Of a DNA stretch of 64,000 nucleotides, positions 1 to 53,996 are shown one piece after another. The DNA comes from Malacoraja senta. Lineage: Eukaryota. Location: positions 37,448,001-37,512,000 of the forward strand of contig CM075979.1 in the NCBI GenBank assembly GCA_038087875.1, read 5' to 3'. The notes under the pieces were generated by a model. It worked only from the letters and a program-made list of their open reading frames with translations. It ran no database searches and had not been told where the DNA came from. How positions within the stretch are numbered: the first letter of the stretch is position 1; the number at the start of each line of letters is the position of its first letter. The position numbers and the translations under genes are program-made.

Positions 1-392
1 TATTGGGTAGATTACTTTTGTATTTCATATTTTCTCCCTGTATTGCCTTTTTAGTTTGCTTCCCAATCCTCCAGCTTACCAATAATCTTTGCAATGTTTA
101 TATGCCTTCTCTTTCAGTTTTATGCTGTCTTTGACTTTGTCAGCCACGGTTGCCTCATTCTCCCATTAGAATCTCACTTCCTCTTTGGAATGAAAAGATT
201 TGCATCTTCCGAATTGTTTTCATAAATTCTTGTCATTGCTGTTCCAACGTCATTCCTGCTTGGTTCCCTTTCCTATCTACCTTAGCCAGCTCCTCCCTCA
301 TGCCTCTGTCGTCACCTTTGCACAACAGAAATACGCACGTATCCGATTTCATCTTCTCCCTCGCAAATTACAGGGTGAATTTTATCATATTA
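1..392 (-). mobile_element. Decayed CR1 LINE ORF2 fragment
   Basis: Minus strand reads ...KGDDRGMREELAKVDR..., matching KGDFEGMRRELAKIDR of the CR1 ORF2 at 61379-62287. Confidence 0.75.
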
Positions 393-685
393 CTAGACTA
401 AGTGGGACCCGTTGGGTCCCATGTTCACACGGGAGGGCTAGTCCCCCGACGCAATATTCCACCTCTCCACCAATTCCAATATTGGTGGCCAGTGGGGGGG
501 GGGCTTTCTGGAGCGTTGGTATGGGTGTTGTTGGCTGCAGGGACTACTGGTCTCCAGGGGGCTAGTATGGACATTGTGGGCCAAATGGATTATTAGGGTG
601 GCAGCTCAGTCCCTCAAGCCTGATGTGCTGGCAGCTCACTCAGCTGGTGGGCTGGCAGTTGACTCACGGCTATTCCTTGAAATTC

Positions 686-940
686 CATTTCAAGCAGGGT
701 GCAAGGCCACCAAATTCAAATCCATTTTCCTACCACTTCAAGCAGGGTGCAAGGCCACAAAATTCAAGTGCAGTTTCATACCATTTCAAGGGGGGTGCAA
801 GGCCACCAAATTCAAATGCAGTTTCATACCATTTCATGCAGGGTGCAACGACACCACATTCAAATGCAGTTTCATACCATTTCATGCAGGGTGCAAGGCC
901 ATCACATTCAAATGCAGTTTCATACCATTTCAAGCAGGGT
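686..940. repeat. 48-bp minisatellite, ~5 copies, inside Helitron
   Basis: Unit ccatttcaagcagggtgcaaggccaccaaattcaaatgcagtttcata, seen as a 16-aa periodicity in the ORF track. Confidence 0.9.
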
Positions 941-1321
941 GAAACCACCATAAAACCACACAAAACACCACACTCACAGTTCAGTAGACATTCAGTGTGT
1001 TCAGTTGATTCACAGCTCAGACAGAGACGTGACCTCTCCCTCCCCCATCATGCAGAGACTGAGCCACACCCACACTTCTGGGTTTTATAATCCCTCCCCC
1101 TCCCACCAGAAAGGGTGTGGCCTTCATGCCATGATTGACAGGAGAGATTCTCAACATTTTTAAAACACTAATAACACTTTTATTTTTCATTGATGGGAAG
1201 AATCCTCTGCACCTGATGAGCGGAGGGGGACTGAGTAAGAAGGCCAAAAATCACAGCCGTAAGTGGTAGCGTTTTTATCTAAAATAAATATAGTACAAAC
1301 AGGAAGTTGTCAAGTTTAGAT

Positions 1322-2140
1322 AAACAACCATTTGCAGTGCCTTTTACTTCAACCCAAAACCCCCAAACAACCCTTTGCAGTGCCTTTTCACTTCAACCCA
1401 AAACCCCCAAACAACCCTTTGCAGTGCCTTTTCACTTCAACCCAAAACCCCCAAACAACCCTTTGCAGTGCCTTTTCACTTCAACCCAAACCCCCCAAAC
1501 AACCCTTTGCAGTGCCTTTTCACTTCAACCCAAACCCCCTAAACAACCCTTTGCAGTGCCTTTTCACTTGAACCCCAAACCCCCAAACAACCCTTTGCAG
1601 TGCCTTTTCACTTCAACCCAAAACCCCCAAACAACCCTTTGCAGTGCCTTTTCACCAACCCAAAACCCCCAAACAACCCTTTACAGTGCCTTTTCACTAC
1701 AACCCAAAACCCCCAAACAACCCTTTGCAGTGCCTTTTTACTTCAACCCAAACCCCCAAACAACCCTTTGCAGCGCCTTTTTACTTCAACCCAAAACCCC
1801 CAAACAACCCTTCGCAGTGCCTTTTTACAACCCAAAACCCCCAAACAACCCTTTGCAGTGCCTTTTTACTTCAACCCAAAACCCCCAAACAACCCTTTGC
1901 AGTGCCTTTTTACTTCAGCCCAAACTCCCCAAACAACCATTTGCAGTGCCTTTTTACTTCAGCCCAAATCCCCCAAACAACCATTTGCAGTGCCTTTTTA
2001 CTTCAGCCCAAACCCCCCAAACAACCATTTGCAGTGCCTTTTTACTTCAACCCAAAACCCCTAAACAACCATTTGCAGTGCCTTTTTACTTCAACCCAAA
2101 ACCCCCAAACAACCATTTGCAGTGCCTTTTTACTTCAAAC
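1322..2140. repeat. 43-44-bp minisatellite, ~19 copies, inside Helitron
   Basis: Unit aaacaaccctttgcagtgccttt(c/t)acttcaacccaaaaccccc. Confidence 0.95.
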
Positions 2141-2300
2141 CAACCATATTTTCATTTTCAAACCACATTAAGGGCACTCACAGTTGAGTAGACATGTGTT
2201 CAGTGTTATTCGGAGAGACGTGACCCTCTCGCTTCCTCCATCTTGCAGAGACTGAGTGAGGCACACCACTTCTGGATTTTATAGTATCTCCCCCCTCCCA

Positions 2301-2315
2301 CCAGCAGGGGCAGCA
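2301..2315 (+). promoter_or_regulatory. CTCF-like motif within Helitron 5' module
   Basis: CCAGCAGGGGGCAGC matches the vertebrate CTCF core consensus; binding not shown. Confidence 0.45.
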
Positions 2316-2619
2316 GAGAGAATGGCGAAATTCATATTTTAAACATTCATATCTCTCTGATTTTTTATCGATGGGAAAAATCCTCCAGTCCAATCCGGCG
2401 GAGGGGGGCTCTGAGCGAGGTGGCCAAAAATGACGGCCGTATGTGGCGGCATTCTCTCGGAAATCACATCGCAGTGAGTCAAAAGTGGTCAAGATCTTAC
2501 TTTCAGTAATATAGATGAGTTCAAACTGAAGTTCAATAGATAGAGCAAAGGGGAAGTTATAGAGTTATAGACTGCGGAATATAGTTCTCAGTGTTGAGTG
2601 TTGTAGCGCACCAGTTCCT

Positions 2620-3915
2620 TAGACAAAGTCCAATCTCCTCAATGGGGTAGAAGTGAATCTACCTAAGCTTTTGGAAGAACTATTCAGAAGCCCGATAATG
2701 GAGGGAAATAAGGTTTTCCTGACTTTGAAAGTGCTTGCCTTCAAGCTACTGCACCTACTGCCAGATGAGAGCAGGGAGAAGAAGGAATATTTTTTGATTA
2801 TATTGCCTGGTTTTCTGAAGCAGCGTGACGTGTTTGTCGGAGTCAAAAGTGATAAGTCTGCTTGGGCTACATATGCAATCTCTGGAATTGCTTGAAGTCT
2901 TGGACAGAGCAGTTCCCAAACCAAGTTGTGACACAACAGACAATATACTTTCTATGATGCATCTGTAGACGTTTTTAAGGGTCATTGGAGACATACCGTG
3001 TTTCCTCAGTCTTCTCATGAAGCAGAGGCATTGGTGTGCTTTCTTGGCTGTTGCATCAATGTGGTTGGTGAATGACAGATAATTTGTAATATTAACTCCA
3101 ATGAATTGAAGCTCTCACCCATTTCTACAGCCGCACCATTGATGCCGATTGGATCACGTACTTCCTGAAGTCAATAAAACTCCTTTATCATGCTGACATT
3201 ACAGGAGAGTTTATTGTCCTGACACTATTACTCATTTCTTTATCGCCATCTTGTACTCCATTTTGTCATTGTTCGTGATAGGGCCCACCACAGTGGTGTT
3301 GTTTGTAAACTTGTAGATGGAATTAGAGCTGAAATTGGTTGTACGGTCATGAGTGTAAAGGGAGTATAATAAGCGACTGAGAATGCATCCTTGCAGGGCA
3401 CCGGTGGAGAGAGTTAGGTTCGAGAAGACTTATCCTCACTGATTGAGGTCTGTGGGTCAGAAAGTTGAAGATCCAGTGGCAGAGGGGGGAGCTGACACCT
3501 TGGTTCTAGAGTTTGGAGATGGTTTTGGATGGGATTATAGTGCAGATCTAAAGTCAATAAATAGGGATCTATTAAATAGGACTAAATAGGAATCTATTAA
3601 ATAGGATAAATTGGACTCTCCCTCTTCAGTCCTTGTCGATTAGGTGTTCCAGAGATGAGTGCAAGTCCAGGAGGATGGCAATTGTTGTGGACCCGTTGCG
3701 ATGGTACGCAAACTGCAGTGGATCAATGCAGGCTGGAATTAATGGAATGGAATTAACCATCACCAGTCTCTTGAAGACTTTGTGATGGTGGATGTCAGAG
3801 CCACTGGATGGTGGTCATTAAGGCACACTTCCTTCCCTTCCTTCAGCATGTGGATGATAGTGGTCATTTTGAAGCAGGTGGGAATGTCAATGAAGTAGCG
3901 AGATGTTAACTATGT
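2620..3915 (-). mobile_element. Old decayed Rex1/Babar-like LINE RT fragment
   Basis: Minus-strand peptide MRRLRKHGMSPMTLKNVYRCIIESILS is homologous to the C-terminus of the RT ORF at 42879-44066. Confidence 0.7.
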
Positions 3916-4024
3916 CAGGAATTAATCGATAATCTGCAGTGAAGTTCACTGATCCATATATCTGTTTTTTTAAAGGCTTTATTTCAACTATGCTCAGTGT
4001 TTAACATTAATATTTATGAGCTAA

Positions 4025-5485
4025 CAAGACCGTGGGACCCATTTGGTCCCGTTACCTCAATGCAATATTCCACCATTCACCCTATCCCCCAACTGCGCAG
4101 GCGCGGCTGACGTTTTTAAAGTTTAAATGTCAATAACACGTTAAAAAAAAAATCACTTTCCCTGTTCAGTCCCTTATTCCCCTCCTTCATTAACCTCCCT
4201 CTCCCCACCCTCCACCAACCCTCCTCTGCTTCCTCCCCTCAGTCCCCTCCCTCCCCTCCTCTCTATTCCTCCTCCCCTCGATGACTTGGCCATCCCTCTT
4301 CCTACTCCTATCCTCCTCCATTTGCCCTCATCCCCCAGCACTCCCTCCCCCTCCTCTTCACCCTCCCTCTTCTTTTCTCTCTCCTCCCCTCCCTCACCTC
4401 TCCCTCTCTCTCCTTTCCCCTACCCTCCGTTATTTGCTCCCTTCCTCCATAACCCCTCTCCCCTCCCTACCCCCTCCGCTCCCTCTATTCCCCCTCCTCC
4501 CCCACTCCTCACCTCCCCCCTATCCCACCCCCCCCCCACTCTCCCTCCTCACCTTCCCCACTGTCCTTCTCTCCCTCTATCCCCCACTCCCTATATCCCC
4601 CACTACCCCCTCCTCTCCCTCTATCCCCCTTCCTCCCCCACTCTCCCTCCTCACCACCCCAATTTTCCTCCATCTCTCTCCCTACCCCCTCCTCTCCATC
4701 AATCCCCCCACTCTCTCCTCACTTCCCCAGGATCTTTATGTAAACCACTGCTGGCCCCATTTTCTCCACCACGTCCGCGATGAAGTTGTACTTGAGGCAG
4801 AGGCTGTCGGAGGAACGTGTCGAGTGGCCTGGAGCCGGAGGAGGGAGAGGGAGAGGCCGAGGCTGCGGCCTTGTCCTTGTCCCGGGTCCCGCTCCTCTCC
4901 CTCCCCGCGGGCCCGGAGCAGCAGCACCCCCGCCCCCAGACCTAGCCCCAGCGCCCAGGCCCCGGGTTCCCGGCGCGGCCTCTCCCCGCTCCCAGACTCC
5001 GTTGCGTGGGCCCAGAGCGGCAGCGCCGCCACCAGTGCCAGTGCCACTGCCCAGTTCCTGGGTCCCAGGCATGGCCTCTCCCCGCCCCCACAAGTCCCTC
5101 TCCTCTCCCTCCCCGCGGGCTCAGAGCAGCAGCACCGCCGCATCCAGACCCAGCCCTAGCCTCAGTGCCCAAGCCCCGGGTCCCAGGCACGGCTTCTCCC
5201 AGCCCCCAGACTCACCACTGCATGGATACCGGGCCCACTGCGCACGTTCCGGGCTGATGGGCATCTCCAACTGCGCAGGTGCTGCCGGCAAGTGGGGGCG
5301 CTGTTATTTTAAATTTTAAATGTCAATAACTTATAAAATATAACATCAATCAGAACAAAACTTGTCTCTTTTATATCCCAGGACACTGGTGAGTAAGGTG
5401 GGCCAAAAATTATAGCGTTATCATGAACCATTTTGGCGGAGATTTGAAGCGTCACTCGTGCACATGCTTACAAAGTTTTAGTAAT
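4025..5485 (-). mobile_element. Helitron-family element carrying a captured host gene fragment
   Basis: Degenerate 3' end GGGACCAAATGGGTCCCACGGTCTTG|T, plus GCAATATTCCACC, GAGTAAGGTGGGCCAAAAAT and TTTTAGTAAT blocks shared with the Helitrons at 393-2515 and 53193-53996. Confidence 0.7.
4723..5213 (-). pseudogene. HTRA2: Captured HTRA2 (Omi) exon-1 fragment, frameshifted, followed by a GT splice donor and purine-rich intron-like sequence
   Basis: [23 protein letters not shown] resembles HTRA2 [22 protein letters not shown]. Upstream, in another frame, WALGLGLGAGVLLL resembles the HTRA2 transmembrane segment. Similarity stops at AA|GTGAG (4723/4722). Confidence 0.8.
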
Positions 5486-7413
5486 TCCTATAAAAGCTTA
5501 ACATATTATTAAAAAATTAAGAAATATGCACTATATGTTAGCATTCAAACTACTTCAGTGATTCTTCCTTCTTCTTCGGCTTCTTTAAACAGACATATCT
5601 TGGTTATCAGTCTTACCAAGGTGTTGCTCTTGGTCTGAAGTTGTACTGAACGCACAAAACCCTTTGCGTCTGGTATGATCTCCAATATTCTGCCCATCAG
5701 CCAGGAACCTCGTGGCACAGTTGAATCAACCACCAAAATGATGTCACCTGGAATCAAGTTTGTTTTTACCCCTGACCATCGTTGTCGTTCTTGGATTAGA
5801 GGCAAGTATTCCTTTGTCCACCATTCCAAAAAAAAAGCCATATATTGTACCTGTCTCCATCTGCGTTTAATATACAAATCTTCCTTCACAAAGAGCCCAG
5901 GTGGTAATATTGGCTTGATCTTCAACACAAGAAGATGGTTTGGTGTAAGTGCTTCCAAGTCCCTTAGATCATTAGAACTCCTGGTAATGGGCAAAGTCTG
6001 CAATCCTTCATCGTCCAGAACTTGTTGTTTAAGAACAGAGCGCAGCACACTTCGAACCATGTGGATCAATCGTTCCCAAACACCGCCGTGATAGGATCCC
6101 GCTGGGGGATTAAAATTCCACCTTATCCCTTGCTGAAGCATAGCATTCTGGATTTGATTCTGATAAAAGCCTTTGAGTGCTTCTCTCAATTCTCTTTCCA
6201 CTCCGATAAAATTTGTGCCATTATCTGATCTTAAAGATGAAACTTGACCTTGCCGACAGATGAATCTTCATGGTATCAATGCAGGAGTCTGTGTCAAGCG
6301 TAGATGCAACTTCAAGATGTACTGCCCTGCTTGCATTGCAAGTGAAGATTACACCATATCTTTTAACTAGACTTCGTCCTCTCTTCACCTCTATCAGACC
6401 GAAGTGGTCTACTCCTATATCTGTAAATGGAGGCTTATCAGGTAGAATCCTCTCCAGGAGCAAGTCTGCCATTTTCTGTTCTCCAACTCTTCCACGCTGC
6501 CATCTACACACAGTCTTTTATGACCTTTCTTGCAGCAGAGTTAGCTTTGATAATCCAGTAAATTTTACGAAGTTGCAACAGCATATAATTTCTCCCTCCG
6601 TGTCCACTCTGATCATGGATATTTCATAGCAGTAGTGTTGATATGTAAAAGTCCTTCGAGAGAATAATAGGATGTTTAGCCTCTTCATGCATCGCTAGTC
6701 TATTCAGGCGACCACCTACTCTCAGAAAACCTTCATTCAATACCGGATCTAGCTTGTACAAATGACTGCTTCTTTTAATACCCTGTTTACCAACTTTTAA
6801 TGTTGATAGTTCTTCTTTGTATCTTTGTCTTTGACAGAAAGAAATAACTGTGTTTTCTGCTTTAAGAAGATCTTCGGGACACAAACACAGTCCACAGTAT
6901 AATGCTTTAAAGACTTGCATCTCCTTGTCAACCTTTTCCTTTAATTTGCCAAGATCTTTTTCAAAGATACCTCTAGCAATCTCCTTTCTTTTTCGAGTCA
7001 ATAGCAAGAACATTGTCCTTGGTTTAAGAAACAAAGTTACCACAGTTTTCAGCTCATTCCAAGATGAGAAATAGGTAATTAAATAGTTTGTTGAGTCCAA
7101 TCGATCCTTGACAATGACGTTCACCGTGATGTCTTGCTTGATTTCCAGATCATTAGCAGAGATTTCACCTTCCAGATTAAGCTTTGGCCATTCTCTGTCT
7201 GGCTTACCGAGAAGCTCTGGTCCCTTGATTCATCTCTTATTGCCTAAAAAGCGGTCTGCTGTTAGTTCTCTAGAGGCTTCATCTGTAGGATTTTCCTTTG
7301 TGTTAACATATCTCCACTGTGATACATTAGTAGCATCCCTCACAAAAGAGATCCTGTTTACTACAAATGTTTGAAAGCATTTGTTTTTGTTGTTGATGTA
7401 CTTAAGTACTGTT

Positions 7414-8805
7414 GGTAGACAAAAATGCTGGAGAAACTCAGCGGGTGCAGCAGCATCTATGGAGCGAAGGAAATAGGCAAAGTTTCGGGCCGAAATCCTT
7501 CTTCAGACTGATGTAGGGTGGGGAGGGGGGGGGGGGCGGGGAGAAGAAAGGAAAAAGGAAGAGGAGGAGCCCGAAAGCTGAGGGAGAGCTCAGAAGGGGA
7601 GGAGACAGCAAGGGCTACCGGAAATTGGAGAATTCAATGTTCATGCCACTAGGGTGCAGACTGCCCAAGCGGAAAATGAGGTGCTGCTCCTCCAATTTCC
7701 GATGGTGCTCACTCCGGCCATGGAGGAGGCCCAGGACAGAGAGGTCGGATTCGGAATGGGAGGGGGAGTTGAAGTGCTGAGCCACCGGGAGATCAGGTTG
7801 GTTAATGCGTACCGAGTGGATGTGTTTGGCGAAACGATCGCCAAGCCTACGCTTGGTCTCACCGATGTAGATCAGCTGACATCTAGAGCAGCGAATGCAA
7901 TAGATGAGGTTGGAGGAGATGCAGGTGAACCTCTGTCGCACCTGGAATGACTGCTTGGGTCCTTGAATGGAGTCGAAGGGGGAGGTAAAGCGACAAGTGT
8001 AGCATCACTTGCGGTTGCAAGAGAAAGTGCCCAGGGAGGGAGTGTTGCGGGAGGGAAGGGAAGAATTGACCAGGGAGTTACGGATGAGCGGTCTTTGCGG
8101 AAAGCAGACAGGGGGGGAGATGGGAAGATGTGGCGAGTGGTGGGGTCACGTTGGAGGTGGCGAAAATGACGGGGGACTATTTGTTGCATGTGACGGCTAG
8201 TGGGGTGAAAGGTGAGGACTAAGGGGACTCTGCCCTTGTTACGAGTGGGGGGGATGGGGAGAGAGAGCAGTGTTGCAGGGTATGGAAGAGACCCTGGTGA
8301 GAGCCTCATCTATAGTAGGGGAGGGGAACCCCTGTTCCCTGAAGAATTAGGACATTTCCGATGCCCTGGTATGGAACACCTCATCCTGGGAGCAGATGCA
8401 GCGTAGACGGAGGAATTGGGAGTAGGGGATGGAGTCCTTACAGGAAGTAGGGTGGGAAGAAGAGTAGTCTAGATAGCCATGGGAGTCAGTGGGTTTATAG
8501 TTGATGTTGGTCAGAAGTCTATCACCTGCGATGGAGATAGTGAGGTCAAGAAATGGTAGGGAAGTGTCGGAAATGGTCCAGGTGTATTTGAGTGCCGGAT
8601 GGGAGTTAGTGGTGAAGCAGATGAAGTCAGTCAGTTGTGTGTGGGTGCAGGAGGTAGCACCAAAGCAATCGTCGATGTAGCGGAGGTAGAGGTCGGGGAT
8701 GGGGCCCTGGTACGCGTCAAACAAGGATTGTTCGACGTACCCGACAAAGAGGCAGGCATAGCTGGGGCCCATGCGCGTGCCCATAGCTACGCCTTGTATT
8801 TGGAG
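7414..8805 (-). mobile_element. 5'-truncated Penelope-like element (RT C-terminus + GIY-YIG endonuclease + hammerhead-bearing 3' region)
   Basis: MGTRMGPSYACLF...YLRYIDD (PLE RT); LIYCIRC..YIGETKRRLGDRF (GIY-YIG); CTGAAGA..GAAAC core near 7480-7510. Confidence 0.9.
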
Positions 8806-9547
8806 GCTATCAGTCCAAAAGATGGATTTCTCCAGCTGAAGCTGTAATTCCTTTCACAATATTTTGTCCACTCTGACAGCTAGGACTGCAGCCGTAAGTT
8901 CCATTCCGGGAATCGTCATTTGCTTCAATGGTGCCACTCTGGCTTTCCCATTATGAATGCAACATATGCTTGGTTGTTATCGTCTACCAGTCTCAGCTAT
9001 GAAACAGTACCATAACCATTTTCACTTGCATCTGAAAAGTGGTGTAACTGTGCCACACCACGCCACTTTGAATTCCGACATCTGCTGTTGAGATCTGCTA
9101 ACTATCCTGCCCATTGCTGAGAGAAGATTTGTGTTATGCTCTCATCCCATTCGAGTTTTTCCTTGCAGAGCTCCTGCATAATCAGCTTGGCAGGCAGAGT
9201 AAATGGTGCTAGAAATCCCAAAGGATTGTATATAGAGCCAACCACGGATAAGATGCCCCGTCGGGTATATGGTCATTCTTGTACCACAATTCTGAATTTG
9301 AACACATCTGTTTCAATACACCAGTGCAATCCCAGTGCTCTTCCCATAGGCAGATTGTCTTTGTCCAAATCCAACTCGCTGGTCTCCTTGTGGAATGGTA
9401 GCCAATACGGCACGGCAGTTGCTGATCCACTTTGACAGCATGAATCCTCCCTTTTGGCAGCGGGAAGTCAGGTGTGCTGCCATTTGAATTGCTTCCTGTT
9501 CCGAAGACATGAACTTTAACAATCATCCACATAGAAGTTGTTCTTTA

Positions 9548-9847
9548 AGTCCCACTATACGAGTTTACCCAAGAGCTCTCCCGAGTTTTGAAAAAATCAG
9601 ACTCGTGGTAAGTACGTAGAATGTACGTAGCGGGTACATCAGAGCTTGGGACGTCTCTTAGCGGCTCGTAACGCTAATGGCAGGAACTCAGGAAACGCGG
9701 TAAGCTCGTGAAGTTTTTTCAACATGTTGAAAAATGTCCACGAGAGCCCAGAGTACCTACGTGTGGCTATTACCGTAATTCTCCGAGTTCGAATCAGGGG
9801 AAATGCGGGAGAACTCTTGAATTACCTCGTACAGTGGGACAGGCCCT
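9548..9847. mobile_element. PIF/Harbinger-type MITE
   Basis: Inverted termini gtcccactatacgag / ctcgtacagtgggac (left TIR clipped). TTA TSD at 9545-9547 and 9848-9850. Interrupts BEL TVK|NNFYVDD. Confidence 0.8.
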
Positions 9848-10478
9848 TTACTGTGTTTGTTACCTCTGCTGAGAAATAAGCTTTGTTGTCCACAGCAGTC
9901 CTTCTTAATGCAAAGTTTGCACAACTTGGTGATAACACTGCTCCAACGAGATGTACCTTCATCTGGAATTTAACAAGATCTTGCTGCGCATCACCACTGC
10001 AGGAATCGCAAATAGTCAATATGCTTTTCTGATACTTTGACTTGCTGAAACATTGCTTTTAATATCAGCCATCTAAATAACCGGTTCTTGTCTGAATCTG
10101 ATGAGAACTCCAATGAGCGAGTTGGTAAGGTCTGGCAGTGGCAGTTAAGTGATGCTCCTTTGAAGACTGCCCCACAGTCAAAGACCAACCCTCAAAGTTC
10201 CTTTCCTTGAGAGATACACCCAATGGTGTGGGATATACCAGAGTTCTCCATCACTTCGATTCAACTGGTTCACTGATACCATTTCAGTATAACCATTATC
10301 GATCATTCCTGTGAGAAAAGATGAATATTCATCACAATTTTTAAAATTATTTTCAAACTAGCATATCAGGCTCTGGATGCACTGCTCTGCAATGCAACGG
10401 CTATTCGGAAAACTGACACTTTCTTGTTTGAAAGGTAAGTCGAGACAATAGACAATAGTGGATACTATTCATGATATC

Positions 10479-13400
10479 TGTAGATGAGATATGCATGTGC
10501 CTTTAACATAGTGACCTCACACCCACTAACCACTCCCCATATCACAAGTATAACTACAACCTCCACACCCACAGATCGCTCTCTAGTTCCTGTGACAGAC
10601 CACGTACAGCTAGTGCAATGTATAATGTCCAGTATGAATAAAGATAGTAAAGTAACGATGTCTCGTTATCAATCCTTTACATGGTGTCAAATAACGTACC
10701 TTGCGCCTCCCGTTTATCGGTTTATCATTTAATTTTGACCCAGTTTTTTGTTTCCCCCCCTAACTGTTTTTGTTATGGCCTCTTCTGCCCGTAAGCCCGA
10801 TGCGCTCGTTTTTGATTTCGACATCGCCCTTCGATGGGACATATTCAAACGCGACTTTGAACACTATTTCACGATTGCCCATCCTGGCGCCACCGACGCT
10901 CTCAAAGCCTCGCTGCTTCTCAACTTGGCTGGTCCCAACGCCTTGACTCGCTCGGACTTCTTCGTCTACGCTCCTGGAGAATCAGCTCGGGACCCGGCAT
11001 GTCTGTTGGCTAAGTTTGACGCTATTTGTGACATTCCTACTAATTGCATTTTAGAACGTTTTAAACTGTTCGCGCGGCGTCAGCTCCCTGGGGAATCGGC
11101 TGAGAACTATGTCATTGCGCTGCGGGACCTGGGCAGGCGCTGCCGCCTCGAGACGTGGACCCCCGATAATGTCATCAGGGACCTACTGGTTTACGGTCTC
11201 CGTGATGAGAAGCTCAGGTCCGAACTACTTCGCAAGCCGGATCTGACCTTGGCCGATGCAATGCACGCTACTCGCTTAGCCGACGCTGTTTCCGCGGCGG
11301 CACCGCCGGCTGAACAGGCGATCAACTTTGCCAGCACTCCTAGCTATCCCATGAACGCACCCCAGTCGCGACCCCCGGTGTCGCTCGCTGCTCGAGGGGG
11401 ACGCGCCCCGGGGTTCGGTGGTGCCACAAGGGGAGACACCCAGCAAAGGTGCCCTAATTGCAACTTCACATCTCATCAGTTCAATGTGTGCCCTGCGCTG
11501 GGAAAGTACTGCAACTCCTGTAATAAGTTGAACCATTTTGCTGCAGCCTGTCGTTCCCGTGGGAAGCCTGTCGCTGCTCGAAGGCAAAATTTAAACAACC
11601 TTCTACAGTCGGATAATGATCTCAGCTCCCAGCACTATTCCGATGAACATTCTGTTCCTACATCCAACTCCTCTCAGGCAGAAACCAGCTTGTTTACCGT
11701 GGTGAACGCACCTGCTATGATAACGGATCCTTCTGTGCAAGTCACTGTGAACAACTCGACCTTCACGGCCAAAATCGACACTGGGGCGGTTACCAATGTT
11801 ATGTCAACATCTCTTTTCAACCAGATAAGGACTAATGAGAAGATATTTTCTCAGAGCTCAAACCTGCATGCCTACGGTGGGGAGATCCTTACTCCTGTGG
11901 GCAAGGCCACTCTACACTGTAAGATACTGAAGGCCACTCGGCCCCTCACCTTCTTTCTCCTCAATCGAAGTTGCGTTCCCCTGCTGGGGATCCAGGCATG
12001 CCAGGAAATGGGACTGGTGTCCTTCCACCGGGACATCCACCACGTGCGGGCTCTTATGGACCCGCTGGCCGAGTATCCTGACCGCTTTGATGATAAGCTA
12101 GGCAAACTACCCTGCAGCTACAAGATTGAAGTGGACCATAAGATCGTTCCTGTGGTCCATGCTCCTCACCGTATTTCCTTCGCCATGAGGGACAAAGTGG
12201 AGGCGACCCTACACAGTATGGTACAAATGGGCGTCCTAAAGGTGGTCGTCGAGCCCACCAGCTGGGTCTCTTCCATGGTTGTTGCTGCTAAAAAGGACAT
12301 GAGTGAGATACGCATCTGCATCAACCCCAGAGACCTCAACCTGGCCATTCGGCGCCCTCACTACCCTATGAGAACGGTGGAAGACGTCGTTGCACGGGTT
12401 GGTCCAGCAACGGTCTTTTCGGTCCTCGATGCCAAGAGTTCATTCTGGCAGATACCACTGGACGAGCGGTCGTCCATTTTGACAACCTTCGCCACCCCCT
12501 ACGGAAGGTTTCGGTTCCTCCGAATGCCCTTCGGAATCAACTCTGCCAGCGAGGTATTCCAGCGAACCATGGAACAGTTGTTTTCAGATCTGCCTTGCGC
12601 CATAATTGTTGACGACATCCTCGTTTACGGTAAGGATGTTGCCGAACACGATGTCAACCTCCGCCTGATCCTGGACCGGGCCAGGCAAATCAACTTGAAA
12701 CTGAACCCCAAGAAGTGCCGATTCCGCGTCTCGGAGGTCACCTATGTTGGACACGTATTCACCGCTGAGGGGCTGAAGCCTGACCCGCAGAAAACGACTG
12801 CCATCTCAGGGATGCCTCCTCCTACTAACGTGGCAGGCCTGCAACGCTTTCTCGGCTTGGTAAACTACCTGGGGAAGTTCATCCCCGACCTAAGCGAGCT
12901 CAGCGCTCCCCTGAGGGATCTGATCAAAAAGGACACTTCCTGGCTTTGGTTACCCAATCATCAGAAGGCATTTGACATTCTTAAGTCTAAACTTATCAGC
13001 ACACCCACGCTCATGTTCTTTGACCTGCGGCATCCCATTGTCCTCACCTGCGACGCCTCTCAATTCGGACTCGGTGCCGCCTGCCTCCAGGTCCATGACG
13101 GCCTGCAGATGCCTGTCTCATTCGCGTCCCGCACCATGACCGCCACCGAACAGCACTACGCGCAGATTGAGAAGGAGCTACTGGCCGTGCTGTTTGCCTG
13201 CTCCAAATTCCGGGACTACATCGTGGGCAACACTTTCACCGTTGAAACTGACCATCAACCACTTGTTACCATCCTCAACAAACCGATCCATGTGGCCTCA
13301 TCACGTCTGCAGCGCATGCTGCTGCAGCTCCAGCGTTTCACGTTCACGGTGGTTTATCGTAAGGGGAAGGACATGTTCGTAGCCGACACGTTGTCTCGCG

Positions 13401-14589
13401 CCCCGCTGACGTCCACTGCTCGCCACCAATACGAAACGTCCGAGTTACTAGTACTACGATTGAACTTCGTCCCCTCGCCACAGATGAAATCCCTGGTTGA
13501 ACACACTACCAACGACCCTGCCCTGCAACAGCTGTCTGCCGTCATCCGGCAGGGCTGGCCTGACCGTCGCTCGGCACTGCCGGCTGGAGCCGTGCCCTAC
13601 TTCCTGATTCGGGACGAGCTCGTATTGCACGACGGCGTGGTGGTGAAGGGTCACAAAGTGGTCGTGCCCGCGGCGCTGCACGACCACTATTTTCAGGTCG
13701 CACACCGCGGTCACACTGGGGCCGAAGCCACTTTGTCTCTCGCCAAGGCACAGTTCTATTGGCCGGATATGGCAAAGTACATCCGGGAGAGGGTCTCATC
13801 GTGTTCCACCTGCAACAGCCGCGCCCCCCATCAGCAGCGTCAGCCGCTTCTACAGCAGCCCGCGCCCGGACTGCCCTGGATGGCGCTCGCCACAGACATT
13901 TTCGAGTGGCGGGGCAAACATTTCCTGGTACTCGTTGACTTCTACTCCAGCTGGTTTGCGGTTGACCGGCTGCCTTCCGTGACCTCTTCGGCCGTCATCG
14001 ACAGGTTGGACCCTCACTTTAGCACTTTTGGCCCCCCGGCAAGCCTGCAGTCGGACAATGGCAGCCAGTTCACGAGCTCCGAGTTTAAAGCGTTTGCTTC
14101 CAGATGGAACTTTCGCCATTTCACAAGCAGCCCAGAGTACCCGCAAAGCAACGGTTTGGCCGAGCGCGCGGTCCGCAGTGCTAAGCACCTGTTGGAACAG
14201 TGTGGTGGCATTAACTCCGACTTCCACCTGGCCCTCCTCAGCCTTCGGAACATCTCTCGCGACCCTGCCATGGGTTCACCTGCTCAGCGGCTCCTGTCTC
14301 GCGCTACCAGGCTCCCACTCCCGGTGGCCCAGCGATCCCTCATACCCTCGGTCCTTCCACCTGCGGCGGTTCAGAAACGGATTGCCTTCAGGCAAGACAT
14401 CCAAAAGCGGTCCCATGACAGGTCCTGCCACCCGCTGCCGCCCCTCTCCCACAGATCGCTCTCTAGTTCCTGTCACCCACAGATCGCTCTCTAGTTCCTG
14501 TGACAGACCACGTACAGCTAGTGCAATGTATAATGTCCAGTATGAATAAAGATAGTAAAGTAACGATGTCTCGTTATCAATCCTTTACA
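10479..14589 (+). mobile_element. Ty3/Gypsy LTR retrotransposon (Mag-like) with partially deleted 3' LTR
   Basis: 5' LTR TG...CA at 10479-10681; PBS-like TGGTGTCA at 10682; 3' LTR remnant 14474-14589 identical to 10566-10681; ATATC TSD on both sides. Confidence 0.92.
10775..14494 (+). CDS. Gypsy gag-pol polyprotein (Zn knuckles, protease, RT, RNase H, integrase; C-terminus deleted)
   Basis: CPNC..HQFNVC and CNSC..NHFAAAC, KIDTGA, IIVDDIL, TCDAS/EKELLA/TDHQPL, HHCC, and DDE (ATDIF, SDNG, LAER). ATG at 10775 within ORF 10748-14494. Confidence 0.9.
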   Translation: MASSARKPDALVFDFDIALRWDIFKRDFEHYFTIAHPGATDALKASLLLNLAGPNALTRSDFFVYAPGESARDPACLLAKFDAICDIPTNCILERFKLFARRQLPGESAENYVIALRDLGRRCRLETWTPDNVIRDLLVYGLRDEKLRSELLRKPDLTLADAMHATRLADAVSAAAPPAEQAINFASTPSYPMNAPQSRPPVSLAARGGRAPGFGGATRGDTQQRCPNCNFTSHQFNVCPALGKYCNSCNKLNHFAAACRSRGKPVAARRQNLNNLLQSDNDLSSQHYSDEHSVPTSNSSQAETSLFTVVNAPAMITDPSVQVTVNNSTFTAKIDTGAVTNVMSTSLFNQIRTNEKIFSQSSNLHAYGGEILTPVGKATLHCKILKATRPLTFFLLNRSCVPLLGIQACQEMGLVSFHRDIHHVRALMDPLAEYPDRFDDKLGKLPCSYKIEVDHKIVPVVHAPHRISFAMRDKVEATLHSMVQMGVLKVVVEPTSWVSSMVVAAKKDMSEIRICINPRDLNLAIRRPHYPMRTVEDVVARVGPATVFSVLDAKSSFWQIPLDERSSILTTFATPYGRFRFLRMPFGINSASEVFQRTMEQLFSDLPCAIIVDDILVYGKDVAEHDVNLRLILDRARQINLKLNPKKCRFRVSEVTYVGHVFTAEGLKPDPQKTTAISGMPPPTNVAGLQRFLGLVNYLGKFIPDLSELSAPLRDLIKKDTSWLWLPNHQKAFDILKSKLISTPTLMFFDLRHPIVLTCDASQFGLGAACLQVHDGLQMPVSFASRTMTATEQHYAQIEKELLAVLFACSKFRDYIVGNTFTVETDHQPLVTILNKPIHVASSRLQRMLLQLQRFTFTVVYRKGKDMFVADTLSRAPLTSTARHQYETSELLVLRLNFVPSPQMKSLVEHTTNDPALQQLSAVIRQGWPDRRSALPAGAVPYFLIRDELVLHDGVVVKGHKVVVPAALHDHYFQVAHRGHTGAEATLSLAKAQFYWPDMAKYIRERVSSCSTCNSRAPHQQRQPLLQQPAPGLPWMALATDIFEWRGKHFLVLVDFYSSWFAVDRLPSVTSSAVIDRLDPHFSTFGPPASLQSDNGSQFTSSEFKAFASRWNFRHFTSSPEYPQSNGLAERAVRSAKHLLEQCGGINSDFHLALLSLRNISRDPAMGSPAQRLLSRATRLPLPVAQRSLIPSVLPPAAVQKRIAFRQDIQKRSHDRSCHPLPPLSHRSLSSSCHPQIAL

Positions 14590-22341: not shown

Positions 22342-25300
22342 TGTGGTGTATGCCCCTTTAAGAGATATCATACACCTATTGTAATACCGGTAGCCACAAA
22401 AGGGGGCTTGCTTAGTATAAAAGCCCTGGTGGTAGTGTGAGCACTCTCTCTTCCTTTCCCCCTCTGAAACCATGATTAAAGGCACGTTGGTTTTACCTGA
22501 TGGTTTCTCGATGGTTATTTAAGTATCTGACTCCAGTACTTAACAGTGGCGACGAGATTAAAGAACCCTGATGTCTTACCGACCTCGGCATCCTGAAAGA
22601 TCGAGTGGAGAACGCTCCCCGCACCCTCCCAAGGCAAAGAAGCTTGGTAGAGGTGGGTGTGTGGTTGAGGCTGGACTGGAGCTCCAAAGTTGTGAGTGTT
22701 GGGGCAAAGTGCAGTCAAGGGGGAGAAGTAACCTCGGAGAGCGGGCCCCAGGAACGCATTGGTAGTTGGGGTGAATACCGTCGGTAGTGCATAGTGTGCC
22801 GGTGCGGGTTTTCCAGTTTCAGCAGTTAAAGAGGCCTGTATACCCGATGGAGGCTGAAGAGACTGGTTGGAAACGGACCTAGAGGGTCCAGGAAAAAGAA
22901 ACGCTGCGAGAGAAGGGCGCAGACAGGGCGGGAACCGCCATTTTTGGCACGCCTAGAAAAAAAAAAAAAAAAAAACCCGGAAGAGATGGGTGCAAAAGCG
23001 GGAACCGCCATTTTTTTGGCACGCCTAAAAACGGAAGAGAACGGTGCCATTTTACAAGTTTTACAAATTCCATTGAAGCTAATTGATGAGCAACATGGCA
23101 ATATTTGGAATCTTCGAGAGCAACTTAGAGACTTGGGACACATATTTGGAAAGATTTGATGTTTTCTGTACTGTTAATGATATAGCAGATGATAAGAAAG
23201 CTGTGAATTTATTGAATTATATGGGTGCTAAGACTTATGGATTAGCAAAGGGGTTGTTACATCCTACAAAAGCTGCAAATGCAACATTTAAACAGATATC
23301 TGATAAATTAAAGGAACACTTGAATCCAGCACCATTGTTCTTATCTGAGCGTTTTGCATTTTATAAAAGGGACCAGCAGTTAGAAGAAACTGTGGCACAA
23401 TTTCTGGCAGAGCTAAGAACATTAGCTGTATTTTGTAAATTTGATGATTTTTTAAATCAAGCATTACGGGATAGATTTATTTGTGGATTGAAAAGTGAGA
23501 CTCTATTACAAAAACTGTTAGCTGAGGGTGATATAGATTTGTCCAAAGCATTTACAATGGCTACGTCATTTGAGAAAGCCCAAGAGGGCGCGGCGGCCAT
23601 ACAACAGAAGAGTCCAGAGTTTGAAACCCATAAATTATTACCAAAGGCTGAGAGATGTGTCCGGTATGGAAAAACCACTCACCATCAGAAAGATTGCTGG
23701 TTTAAAGATAAAATATGTAATGGATGTGGAAAAGTGGGTCACATTGTACGGGCTTGTAGGTCAAAGAAGCCTGGTAGAAGTGAACACTATAGAGCAAGGA
23801 CATTGGGGGCTGAGGCCAAGTTAGTCCATGAAGTTAGGGAAAGTAGTGTGAGCAGCAGTTGTAGTGACTCAGACGTAGAAGCAAGAGAAGTAAGTTGCTT
23901 AAAGATTAAAGCGGTGCAGAATTCGACAGAACTGGATACAATGTGGGTAATGTTGACCATTTCAGGAGTTTCATTGAAACTAGAACTGGATACTGGTTCA
24001 GCGTTAACGGTGATAAATGAGAAGGATTATTATAGGTATTTTTCACAAGAACGGTTGCAGAAGACTAATATTGCTTTAAAAACTTATACGGGTCAAAAGG
24101 TTAGGCCAAAAGGAAGGATTGAGGTATCAGCCAAGTACAATGGTATGACAGTGAGGAATCTGTTTATATACGTGCTGAGGGAAGGCGGACGGCCATTACT
24201 GGGTAGAGAGTGGGCTAGGAGACTGAAATTTGATTGGTCAACTATTCACTCATTAAAGCACAGGGAGCTGGGGTTAACAGGGCCTTTGCAAAGTAAATTG
24301 GTTGAAGTAAAGCATAGGGAGCGGGGGTTAATAGGACCCTCAAAAAGTAAATTGGCTGAAGTGTTGGCAACAGCTCCAGAGGTGTTTCAATCAGGACTTG
24401 GCAAGTTGGTTGGTATTCAAGCTACTATATCAATTACTGAGGGGTCTGCCCCCAAGTTTTTTAAACCTCGACCAGTACCTTTTGCAATTAGACCAGCAGT
24501 GGAAGCTGAATTAGATAACTTAGAGCAACAAGGAGTGCTCTCAAGGATAGATTGGAGTGAATGGGCTACACCTATTGTGCCGGTTATGAAAAAGGCTTTG
24601 CCGGATGGCCCGGGATTAGCACAGAAAGTACGTATTTGTGGTGATTTTAAAGTTACAGTGAATCCAGTGTTAAAAGTAGTACAATATCCATTGCCAAAGA
24701 TTGATGAGATTTTTGCCTCATTGGCAGGAGGGCAACATTTTTCTAAAATAGATCTGGCACAAGCATATTTGCAGATGGAGGTAGAGGAAGATTCCAGATA
24801 TTACCTGACGATTAATACGCATAAAGGCTTGTATAGGTATAATAGGTTGGTTTTTGGGGTAGCTTCGGCGCCGGCTATGTGGCAGAGAGCCATGGAGCAG
24901 GTGCTGCAAGGTATTCCAGGTACCCAATGTTACTTGGATGATATTTTGATCACAGGTAGGACGGTGGAAGAACACCTCTCCAATTTGGAATGGGTGTTGG
25001 GCAGGTTAAAACGTTATGGCCTTAGGGCTAACAAGGCCAAGTGTGACTTCTTCAAGGAACAACTGGCGTATTGTGGACATTTGATTGATAGACATGGGTT
25101 GCATAAATCACCAGACAAAATTGCTGCGGTGGTAAATGTGCCAGCTCCGGTGAATGTGTCACAGTTACGCTCATTTCTGGGACTGATAAATTACTATCAT
25201 AAATTTTTGCCAAACTTATCTGCTATCCTGTATCCATTAAATGGATTGTTAAAATCAGGGGTGAAATGGAATTGGTCGTTGGAATGTGTGAAGGCATTTG

Positions 25301-53192: not shown

Positions 53193-53996
53193 TTTATATA
53201 ATTAAAAGTCTAAACTTGACCACATCCTGTTTGCACTGTATATTGATTTTAGAAAAAACACGATCACTTACGGCTGTGATTTTTGGCCACCTTACTCAGA
53301 GTCCCCCTCCAGCTGTCAGGGCCAGATGATTTTTCCCATCGATGAAAAATAAAAGACTTATTCATGTTTAAAAACTGTTGAGATTCTCTCTCCTGTCAAT
53401 CACACCATGAATGCCACACCCCTTCCGGTGGGAGGGGGAGGAGCTATAAAACCCGGAAGTGTGGGCGTTGCTCAGTCTCTGCAAGATGGGAGGGAGAGGG
53501 TCACAACTCTCAGTCTGAGCAGGAAATCTACAGAACTCTGAGAATACTGACCTGTGAGTGCCCTTTATGTGTTTTTAAACTGCCTTTTGCAACTGTGTGG
53601 CTATTGAAATGTGTGCCTTTTGCAACTGTAAAAAAAGATGAAAATGTCTAAAATTGATTGTGCACCCTCTCCCCCTTCTCTCACAGTCTCTCACCCGATT
53701 TTGGCAGAATTACTGGCAGTTTCTGAGCTGCCAGCCTGCCAGGCTTGAGTTACTGAGCTGCCAGGCCTGAGTGAGTTGCCAGCCCAAGAATCCATTCGGC
53801 CCACAATGTCCATACTAGCCCTCTGAAAAAACAGTCCCTTCGGCCTACAACACCTATGCTAGCACTCCAGAAAGTCCCCCCCCCCCCCCCACAACACTGG
53901 CCAGCAATCTTGGAATTGGTGGAGAGGTGGAATATTGTGTTGGGGGGCCAGCCCTCCTGTGTGAAACTGGGACCCAACGGGTCCCACTTAGTCTAG
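53193..53996 (+). mobile_element. Non-autonomous Helitron (simple form of 393-2515)
   Basis: A|TTTATATAATTAAAAGTC start (TC>TT); TGGGACCCAACGGGTCCCA hairpin; CTTAGTCTAG|T end; AT target. Confidence 0.85.

What the first reader, a model, noticed from the sequence alone, without database searches (positions are those of the whole stretch)
4025..5485. Helitron that captured exon 1 and the start of intron 1 of the mitochondrial protease gene HTRA2
Seen: between Helitron-type ends shared with two other copies in this window lies a GC-rich segment encoding [23 protein letters not shown], preceded by a hydrophobic WALGLGLGAGVLLL stretch. It ends exactly at a phase-2 GT donor (AA|GTGAG) followed by purine-rich sequence. 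It has the same orientation as the element and is bracketed by a duplicated internal block (CAACTGCGCAGG..TTTAAATGTCAATAAC at ~4090-4137 and ~5268-5330). Known: the motif plus a TM segment fits HTRA2/Omi rather than secreted HTRA1/3/4, and Helitron gene capture is documented in maize, bats and insects. Inferred: DNA-level capture (intron retained, so not a retrocopy), possibly an amplified gene-carrying Helitron family in a chondrichthyan. I know of no description of this but cannot search.
Basis: partly seen in the sequence, partly recalled or inferred. Interest (0 to 1): 0.82.

Follow-up and report, generated by a model that had tools for sequence, protein, structure and literature searches.

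The report
Helitron copy carrying HTRA2 exon 1
This is a decayed copy of a rolling-circle transposon (Helitron) that picked up most of the first exon, the splice donor and the start of the first intron of the mitochondrial protease gene HTRA2 and spread them through a skate-like genome, much like a known case in bats but in a lineage where I found no description of it.

Summary
On the minus strand, 4966-4723 is collinear with codons ~24-125 of batoid HTRA2 exon 1. It is 87% identical in DNA to the little skate gene and 82% to the sawfish gene. The best hit among 1.84 billion proteins is Leucoraja erinacea HTRA2.

The similarity stops at AA|GTGAGG. That is exactly where exon 1 ends (phase 2) in both real genes. 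In both genes, as here, a purine-rich minisatellite follows.

The copy is dead:
- a 1-nt deletion near 4810 shifts the frame;
- the membrane-segment unit is triplicated and one copy carries a stop;
- no other HTRA2 exon lies anywhere in the 64 kb.

The flanks carry Helitron hallmarks: a 3' hairpin 9-13 nt from a degenerate CTAG, no inverted terminal repeats, and an A|T-type junction. They match, weakly but in the same order, two better-preserved copies in the window that have a TC start, a hairpin and CTAG 11 nt after it.

Contigs from four related organisms show that the ends are very abundant. They also show several diverged copies that span the exon-intron junction.

Not shown: the start codon and promoter, transcription, and the capture mechanism.

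The scan has noted HTRA2-carrying Helitrons in at least seven other windows of this genome. Verdict: a real new member of a known kind, of moderate interest.

The parts
4021..4089 (-). Helitron 3' terminal region. The hairpin is GGGACC/GGTCCC at 4034-4050. The degenerate terminal tetranucleotide is CTTG (ending at 4025) or TTAG (ending at 4021). The conserved CAATATTCCACC motif is also here.
   Evidence: The strand folds with z -3.4. It aligns with copies A and B. An independent profile hits 4024-4088 at E 1e-3. Summed contig depth jumps from ~48 at 3900-3999 to ~91,000 at 4000-4099.
4090..4137 (-). Internal block, copy 2 (CAACTGCGCAGG ... TTTAAATGTCAATAAC), on the downstream side of the cargo.
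   Evidence: Exact matches; 81% over 42 bp. Most family copies join 4108 directly to ~4319-4339, so they lack 4109-4318 (joints and loose ends).
4160..4722 (-). Purine-rich (on the minus strand) minisatellite, read as the captured start of HTRA2 intron 1. It begins with the GT donor at 4722-4721.
   Evidence: Sequence; repeat periods. It is 71% identical over 585 bp to Leucoraja intron 1, E 9e-65. The real genes have the same kind of sequence straight after exon 1: L001 6375-~7550 and L002 3408-~4800, at 94-97% purine.
4723..4966 (-). Captured HTRA2 exon 1, codons ~24-125. It covers the transmembrane segment, the linker and the start of the protease domain ([11 protein letters not shown]...). 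A 1-nt deletion near 4810 shifts the frame.
   Evidence: DNA identity is 87% to Leucoraja exon 1 and 82% to Pristis exon 1.
5005..5213 (-). Two extra degenerate copies of the ~105-bp unit that encodes the transmembrane segment; one carries a stop codon. These are nearly private to this copy.
   Evidence: 5094-5213 against 4886-4999 is 82.5% identical. 5188-5116 aligns to L001 6076-6146 with score 57, against a maximum of 30 in shuffles. Depth here is only 125-250.
5214..5267 (-). Stretch of unknown origin that holds an ATG (5262-5260) in frame with the first unit. Homology to the HTRA2 start is not shown.
   Evidence: Local alignment to the first 75 nt of exon 1 plus 60 nt upstream, in both real genes, is no better than shuffles.
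5268..5330 (-). Internal block, copy 1, on the upstream side of the cargo.
5300..5485 (-). Helitron 5' terminal region. The end reads CTAAAACTTTG..., where copies A and B read TCTAAACTTGAC.
   Evidence: Alignment. An independent profile hits 5390-5417 at E 0.04. Depth is ~124,000 at 5300-5399 and falls to ~650 at 5500-5599.
393..1316 (-). Related Helitron copy A. It has a TCTAAAC 5' end preceded by A, an 8-bp-stem hairpin, and CTAG 11 nt after the hairpin followed by T. Its cargo is different.
53206..53990 (+). Related Helitron copy B, with the same ends as copy A.

Best explanation
Window 4021/4025-5480/5485 is one old, inactive copy of a non-autonomous Helitron, oriented on the minus strand. 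Its cargo was copied at the DNA level from the host HTRA2 gene.

The cargo holds about the last four-fifths of exon 1 (transmembrane segment, linker, first residues of the protease domain), the exon's own phase-2 GT donor, and about 560 bp of the purine-rich minisatellite that begins intron 1.

Shown:
- the identity of the cargo;
- the exon-intron boundary;
- the absence of the rest of the gene;
- the hairpin-bearing ends shared with other copies;
- many diverged copies of the ends, and several copies of the exon-intron junction, in this organism and three related ones.

Inferred:
- A Rep/helicase transposase supplied in trans moved the element by rolling-circle transposition, from the 5' end to the hairpin-marked 3' end.
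- The cargo entered an ancestral short element between its 5' and 3' parts by template switching or filler-DNA repair. The ~50-60-bp block duplicated on both sides of the cargo would be a trace of that.
- The present copy does nothing as a gene. It has a frameshift and a stop, its termini are mutated, and its hairpin stem is shortened to 6 bp.
- At most it offers a splice donor in the element's orientation.
For: Cargo identity:
- HtrA motif against PDB.
- Best true relative in 1.84 billion proteins is Leucoraja erinacea HTRA2.
- Frame-aware alignment gives PGAWALGLGLG...GEGEE...GRSLGLS in one frame and DS..[16 protein letters not shown].ILG in the next. Both match skate and sawfish HTRA2.
- DNA identity is 87% and 82% to the two real exons.

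Boundary:
- The real genes end exon 1 at GGGAG|GTGAGG (L001 6374/6375) and GGCAG|GTAGCG (L002 3407/3408), followed by more than 1 kb of purine-rich repeats.
- Many genomic ORFs of other vertebrates end ...ILGR at the same point, because the donor supplies the stop codon.

Not the gene itself:
- No other HTRA2 exon lies in the 64 kb.
- The copy carries a frameshift and a stop.

Helitron features:
- Copies A and B, and a fragment in Leucoraja, have a 17-nt palindrome 11 nt before CTAG, then T.
- Copies A and B have a TC... 5' end, and copy A's is preceded by A.
- This is the layout described for Helraiser/Helibat (PMC4778049).
- The target's ends are the best non-member hits of profiles made from those copies.
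- There are no terminal inverted repeats and no tRNA or Rfam match.

Amplification:
- Summed depth of contigs at least 80% alike is ~91,000-124,000 over the ends and ~6,000-11,000 over 4700-4999, against ~48 in the unique flank. The tool itself warns that summed depth is not a copy number.
- Distinct contigs at ~85% identity span 4610-4924, 4678-4929, 4729-4997 and 4734-5027 in another organism.
- 94-135 contigs per run join the 3' backbone directly to the pyrimidine-rich (plus-strand) region.
Against: - The target's own termini are not canonical: CTTG or TTAG instead of CTAG, and CTAAAAC or TACTAAAAC instead of TC...
- Its similarity to copies A and B is weak (E 1e-3 and 0.04).
- Copies A and B and the Leucoraja fragment all read TAATA after CTAG. 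The true 3' end may therefore lie 5 nt further on, which is not canonical.
- No empty site and no transposase gene were examined.
- No single contig links the exon to a Helitron end in another copy. The chain runs end to repeat region, then repeat region to exon.
- Depth in 4700-4899 may be inflated by low-complexity stretches.
- The intron-start alignment is no better than alignments to other pieces of the same minisatellite (18 of 51 controls score as high).
- Start codon and promoter are not shown.
Confidence: 0.78

Rival explanations
1. The carrier is not a Helitron but another kind of repeat, for example an unclassified composite repeat or a Helentron/Helitron2-like element. The hairpin and CTAG would then be incidental or belong to a different end structure. 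The HTRA2 fragment would still be a multi-copy DNA-level duplicate.
For: - Three independent A/B-type copies share CTAG plus TAATA before their flanks diverge.
- Copy B has G, not A, before its 5' TC.
- The target's termini are degenerate.
- No transposase or empty site was seen.
Against: - The hairpin lies 11 nt before CTAG, followed by T, in three copies, and copies A and B start with TC.
- There are no inverted terminal repeats.
- There is no tRNA-like head.
- Different cargoes sit between the same ends, as is typical of Helitrons.
- In Helentrons, from my own knowledge, the palindrome lies after the 3' inverted repeat and insertion is between T and T. Neither fits here.
Confidence: 0.12
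2. It is a remnant of the real HTRA2 gene, or of a segmental duplicate of it, that happens to lie between two unrelated Helitron fragments. On this reading the Helitron did not capture or move it.
For: - Only 4.7 kb of sequence lies downstream on the minus strand, so a very long intron cannot be excluded from the window alone.
- In the little skate a Helitron fragment lies next to the real exon 1, so such neighbourhoods do occur.
Against: - In both real genes exon 2 lies 3.4 kb after exon 1. The window has nothing there or anywhere else.
- The exon has a frameshift, a stop and an internal triplication.
- Several diverged copies of the same exon-intron junction exist in each of the related organisms examined.
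- The two flanking fragments are the matching 5' and 3' parts of one family, in the same orientation as the exon.
Confidence: 0.06
3. The HtrA-like motif is a chance or convergent similarity within GC-rich low-complexity sequence.
For: Most of the ORF is Gly/Pro/Ala-rich, and a first word-based search with the 124-aa ORF found nothing.
Against: - 17-20 of 23 residues are identical to HtrA proteins.
- 87% DNA identity runs over ~240 aligned bases of skate exon 1.
- The transmembrane and linker parts are collinear with the gene.
- The end point matches the conserved donor.
Confidence: 0.01

Closest known systems
HelibatN3, the vesper-bat Helitron that carries the NUBPL promoter, 5' UTR, first exon and part of intron 1 (Pritham and Feschotte 2007, as cited in PMC4224331; PMC4778049)
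   Same: - It is a non-autonomous Helitron with a DNA-level capture of the 5' end of a host gene.
- The capture includes the first coding exon, its splice donor and the start of intron 1, in the element's orientation.
- It was amplified to many copies.
- The 3' palindrome lies 11 nt before CTAG.
   Different: - The host lineage is a cartilaginous fish (skate-like) rather than a bat, and the gene is HTRA2.
- About 100 codons are captured rather than 6.
- Promoter and start codon are not shown in this copy.
- No transcript evidence exists.
- The termini of this copy are degenerate, and the cargo is flanked by a duplicated 50-60-bp block.
Gene-fragment-carrying Helitrons of maize and other plants
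   Same: They show DNA-level capture of exon-plus-intron pieces between conserved Helitron ends, and cargo that differs among copies sharing the same ends. This is from my own knowledge of the field; it was not tested here.
   Different: Plant elements often carry pieces of several genes. Here a single gene piece was identified in the target copy.
The ALG13-exon-1-carrying Helitron family reported by this scan in the same genome (s1-174991)
   Same: Same genome, the same kind of event (first exon plus donor), and reported to be in hundreds of copies.
   Different: The captured gene is different. I did not examine that family or test whether its ends are the same.

Membership tests
Canonical Helitron (non-autonomous) | 5' terminus TC | tested here: inconclusive
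   Copies A and B start TCTAAACTTGAC. The target reads CTAAAACTTTG or TACTAAAAC at the aligned place, so it is degenerate or shifted by 1-2 nt.
Canonical Helitron (non-autonomous) | 3' terminus CTRR | tested here: inconclusive
   Copies A and B and the Leucoraja fragment have CTAG. The target has CTTG at the aligned place, or TTAG 4 nt further on. All three A/B-type copies also share TAATA after CTAG, which is unexplained.
Canonical Helitron (non-autonomous) | Palindrome or hairpin about 10-12 nt upstream of the 3' end | tested here: met
   Copies A and B have an 8-bp stem 11 nt before the end of CTAG. The target has a 6-bp stem 9 or 13 nt before the end. Fold z-scores run from -2.0 to -3.4. 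The reference layout is in PMC4778049.
Canonical Helitron (non-autonomous) | Insertion between host A and T, with no target-site duplication | tested here: inconclusive
   Copy A has A before TC and T after CTAG. Copy B has G before and T after. The Leucoraja fragment has T after. The target has A before CTAAAAC and T after CTTG; alternatively, after TTAG the three related organisms read T where this genome has C (position 4020). No duplication of flanks was seen, and no empty site was available.
Canonical Helitron (non-autonomous) | No terminal inverted repeats | tested here: met
   The inverted-repeat search of 3990-5520 finds only internal low-complexity pairs.
Canonical Helitron (non-autonomous) | A Rep/helicase-encoding autonomous relative with the same ends in the genome | not tested
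   The only lead is an unchecked first-stage note of a stop-free Rep/helicase ORF elsewhere in this genome (s1-203309).
HTRA2 exon 1 (as opposed to HTRA1/3/4) | N-terminal transmembrane segment and linker directly upstream of the [10 protein letters not shown] motif, in one exon | tested here: met
   PGAWALGLGLGAGVLLL...GEGEE...GRSLGLS...VPP, then the frameshift, then DS..[11 protein letters not shown] are collinear with Leucoraja and Pristis HTRA2 exon 1. The motif alone does not separate HTRA1 from HTRA2.
HTRA2 exon 1 (as opposed to HTRA1/3/4) | Exon ends in phase 2 after ...ILG(R/K), with a GT donor | tested here: met
   The window has GGGAA|GTGAGG at 4723/4722. L001 has GGGAG|GTGAGG at 6374/6375, and L002 has GGCAG|GT at 3407/3408.
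HTRA2 exon 1 (as opposed to HTRA1/3/4) | Start codon and mitochondrial presequence present | tested here: not met
   No significant alignment of 5195-5345 to the first 75 nt of exon 1 plus 60 nt upstream, in either real gene. Only codons ~24-125 are shown.
Promoter-and-first-exon-carrying Helitron acting as an exon trap (HelibatN3 type) | Captured promoter drives transcripts that splice from the captured donor into host exons | not testable with these tools
   No RNA run holds the stretch. No promoter homology was found: BLAST of the element against 6 kb upstream of Leucoraja HTRA2 gives nothing.

The most novel reading that the evidence does not exclude
The capture may have started from a Helitron sitting at the HTRA2 promoter. 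In the little skate a 5'-truncated Helitron of the related A/B type still ends, hairpin and CTAG included, 63 bp upstream of the HTRA2 start codon and in the gene's orientation. That is the donor layout expected for capture by bypass of the 3' end. If so, skates preserve both the donor locus and its amplified products. Some of the hundreds of copies carry a membrane-anchor-coding first exon with a working donor, and these could have seeded chimeric transcripts of host genes.
Probability: 0.12. Interest if true: 0.7.

Novelty: new member of a known kind. Interest (0 to 1): 0.5.

Why it matters
Helitron capture and mass copying of a first exon with its splice donor is a known route to exon shuffling and new transcripts in bats and plants. 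My searches of the paper library for Helitron with HTRA2, and for Helitron with skate, found no description of it in cartilaginous fishes. These fishes evolve slowly, so old capture events and their source loci may still be readable.

This copy adds one well-documented case. Gene, boundary and intron were all checked against two real batoid HTRA2 loci. It also shows that the family predates the split of several related organisms.

The copy itself is decayed and is probably without effect.

Tried and rejected
- Word-based protein search with the 124-aa ORF found nothing. Its length filter excludes full-length HTRA2, and no skate ORFs seem to be on record.
- Searches for RNA runs found none that hold the stretch, so use of the donor at 4723 could not be tested.
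- Homology of the ATG at 5262 and the sequence upstream of it to the HTRA2 start and 5' UTR is no better than shuffles. A MAFFT alignment of that part is ambiguous.
- Base-level homology of the first 60 nt of the intron is no better than alignments to other pieces of the same minisatellite. The intron claim therefore rests on position, strand, repeat type and the 585-bp BLAST match.
- BLAST of the element against the Leucoraja locus for promoter or Helitron-backbone matches found only exon and intron matches. The upstream Helitron fragment there is of the A/B type.
- The search for terminal inverted repeats (the Pack-type or TIR reading of another scan note) found none.
- tRNA and Rfam searches, to rule out a SINE, found none.
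- Profile search for further family copies in the window found only the four already seen.
- The whale-shark model P0016, 'HSPA12B-like' with an HTRA2 exon 1 at its C-terminus, looked like a possible chimera. It is more simply two neighbouring genes merged by annotation, and I did not pursue it.
- The order of events for the duplicated block and for the 4109-4318 segment, which most copies lack, could not be resolved from one copy.

Full report
**What is there.** Read on the minus strand, the stretch has five parts.
- A ~185-bp AT-rich end region runs from 5485 down to ~5300.
- A GC-rich segment runs from ~5267 down to 4723.
- A GT follows at 4722-4721.
- About 560 bp of purine-rich minisatellite runs from 4722 down to ~4160.
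- A ~140-bp end region runs from ~4160 down to 4021 and contains a hairpin at 4034-4050.

The GC-rich segment ends with ...[28 protein letters not shown].

**What the GC-rich segment is.** Against PDB sequences the ORF matches only HtrA proteases. HTRA1 and HTRA2 score about equally, because only the 23-residue motif aligns.

A phmmer search of the last 53 residues against 1.84 billion proteins gave six hits. Four carry the HtrA motif, and the best of those is P0002. NCBI names P0002 'serine protease HTRA2, mitochondrial-like [Leucoraja erinacea]'.

I fetched its locus (L001) and the HTRA2 locus of the sawfish Pristis pectinata (L002).
- Window 4966-4723 is collinear with codons ~24-125 of the 125-codon skate exon 1.
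- One frame gives PGAWALGLGLGAGVLLL...GEGEE...GRSLGLS...VPP.
- After a 1-nt deletion near 4810, the next frame gives DS..[16 protein letters not shown].ILG.
- DNA identity over ~240 aligned bases is 87% to the skate exon and 82% to the sawfish exon.

This settles HTRA2 against HTRA1/3/4. The membrane segment and linker lie directly upstream of the motif in one exon.

Upstream, 5005-5213 holds two more degenerate copies of the ~105-bp unit that encodes the membrane segment, one with a stop. Nothing in 5195-5345 aligns significantly to the first 25 codons or the 5' UTR of either real gene. The start codon is therefore not shown to be present.

**The boundary and the intron.** In the skate gene exon 1 ends GGGAG|GTGAGG (L001 6374/6375). 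In the sawfish it ends GGCAG|GT (L002 3407/3408). Both are in phase 2. The window reads GGGAA|GTGAGG at the same codon.

In both real genes the intron opens with more than 1 kb of purine-rich minisatellite, at 94-97% purine in the sawfish. The element's 4722-4175 matches the skate intron repeat at 71% over 585 bp, E 9e-65.

The first 60 intron bases do not align better to the skate intron start than to other pieces of that repeat. The intron claim therefore rests on position, strand and repeat type rather than on base-by-base homology. A retrocopy is excluded, because the donor and intron-type sequence are retained.

**It is not the gene.** Full-length sawfish and shark HTRA2 proteins find nothing else in the 64 kb. 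In the real genes exon 2 lies 3.4 kb after exon 1.

**The carrier.** Two better-preserved relatives lie in the window, at 393-1316 and 53990-53206, and there is a second partial 5' part at 2160-2503. In Helitron orientation the two full copies start TCTAAACTTGAC. They end with a 17-nt palindrome (8-bp stem), then 11 nt finishing in CTAG, then T. That is the layout described for Helraiser/Helibat (PMC4778049).

The target shares the hairpin sequence, a CAATATTCCACC motif and a GAGTAAGGTGG-CCAAAAAT block, in the same order. Profiles built without the target hit its two ends as the best non-member matches, at E 1e-3 and 0.04.
- There are no terminal inverted repeats.
- There is no tRNA-like or Rfam element.
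- The target's own termini are degenerate: CTTG or TTAG at the 3' end, and CTAAAAC at the 5' end.

One oddity: the two window copies and a third A/B-type copy in the skate all read TAATA after CTAG.

**Amplification and age.** I laid Logan contigs of the source-like run and of three other organisms on 3300-6299 at 80% likeness.
- Summed depth is ~48 in the unique left flank.
- It is ~91,000 and ~124,000 over the two end regions.
- It is ~6,000-11,000 over 4700-4999.
- It is only 125-250 over the extra units at 5000-5199.

The tool warns that such sums are not copy numbers, and low-complexity stretches may inflate some bins. Independent of depth, distinct contigs at ~85% identity cover 4610-4924, 4678-4929, 4729-4997 and 4734-5027 in another organism. 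Two of these bridge the exon-intron junction. Also, 94-135 contigs per run join the 3' backbone (up to 4108) directly to the repeat region at ~4319. Most copies therefore lack 4109-4318.

Contigs of two other organisms run from the left flank into the element's first ~30 bases (3542-4051 and 3797-4051). This suggests the insertion is shared and old.

Other first-stage notes report HTRA2-carrying Helitrons in at least seven other windows of this genome. I did not check them.

**Mechanism.** The element most likely moved by rolling-circle transposition, using a transposase supplied in trans. This is inferred from the end structure. How the cargo got in is not settled.
- The cargo sits between homologous 5' and 3' backbone parts and is flanked by a duplicated 50-60-bp block. 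This fits template switching or filler-DNA repair, with re-entry upstream of the exit point, better than simple read-through to a new terminator.
- In the skate HTRA2 locus, however, a 5'-truncated A/B-type Helitron ends 63 bp upstream of the ATG in the gene's orientation. That is the layout expected for capture by 3'-end bypass.
- The window copy has no internal old 3' end, and the sawfish locus has no such fragment. I therefore treat the bypass idea as a lead only.

**Comparison and novelty.** The closest known case is HelibatN3, which amplified the NUBPL promoter, 5' UTR, first exon and part of intron 1 to about a thousand copies (PMC4224331; PMC4778049). The kind of event is the same. The lineage, the gene and the size of the coding piece differ.

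Promoter capture and transcription are not shown here. No paper in the library combines Helitron with HTRA2, and the two that mention Helitron and skate are not about this. I rate it a new member of a known kind, real but decayed, of moderate interest.

Noticed in passing
L001:5737-5937 (Leucoraja erinacea contig JAMYXN010000928.1), next to HTRA2 exon 1 at L001:6001-6374: A 5'-truncated Helitron of the copy A/B type, 86% identical to the window copies, lies in the same orientation as HTRA2. Its hairpin and CTAG end 63 bp upstream of the start codon. The sawfish locus L002 has no such fragment. This is a possible donor layout for capture by 3'-end bypass.
   Followed up: partly
window 388-396 and 53987-53995; L001:5934-5942: All three A/B-type Helitron copies read CTAG followed by TAATA before their flanks diverge. 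Either the true 3' end lies 5 nt beyond CTAG or the family has a strong target preference.
   Followed up: no
window 385-2503: A composite arrangement. A full Helitron copy (393-1316) is followed by about 14 tandem copies of a ~60-bp unit (1320-2140), and then by a second Helitron 5' part with its own end (2160-2503).
   Followed up: no
window 1020-1140 and 53390-53500 (cargo of copies A and B): In Helitron orientation the cargo of the A/B copies contains a TATAAAA box, a CACCC-type box and a nearby ATG. This may be a captured promoter and first exon of another gene.
   Followed up: no
protein P0016 (Rhincodon typus 'heat shock 70 kDa protein 12B-like'): This gene model ends with an intact HTRA2 exon 1 (...ILGR, then a stop supplied by the donor). 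It is most simply two neighbouring genes merged by annotation.
   Followed up: no
window 10748-14494, 23083-27120 and 5545-6201: Two long Ty3/gypsy pol ORFs (1248 and 1345 aa, with RT, RNase H and integrase) and a BEL/Pao-type DUF5641 ORF lie here. The window is a transposon-rich region with no host exon recognised.
   Followed up: partly
window 4020: The three other organisms read A where this genome has G. On the minus strand that places a T directly after TTAG.
   Followed up: partly
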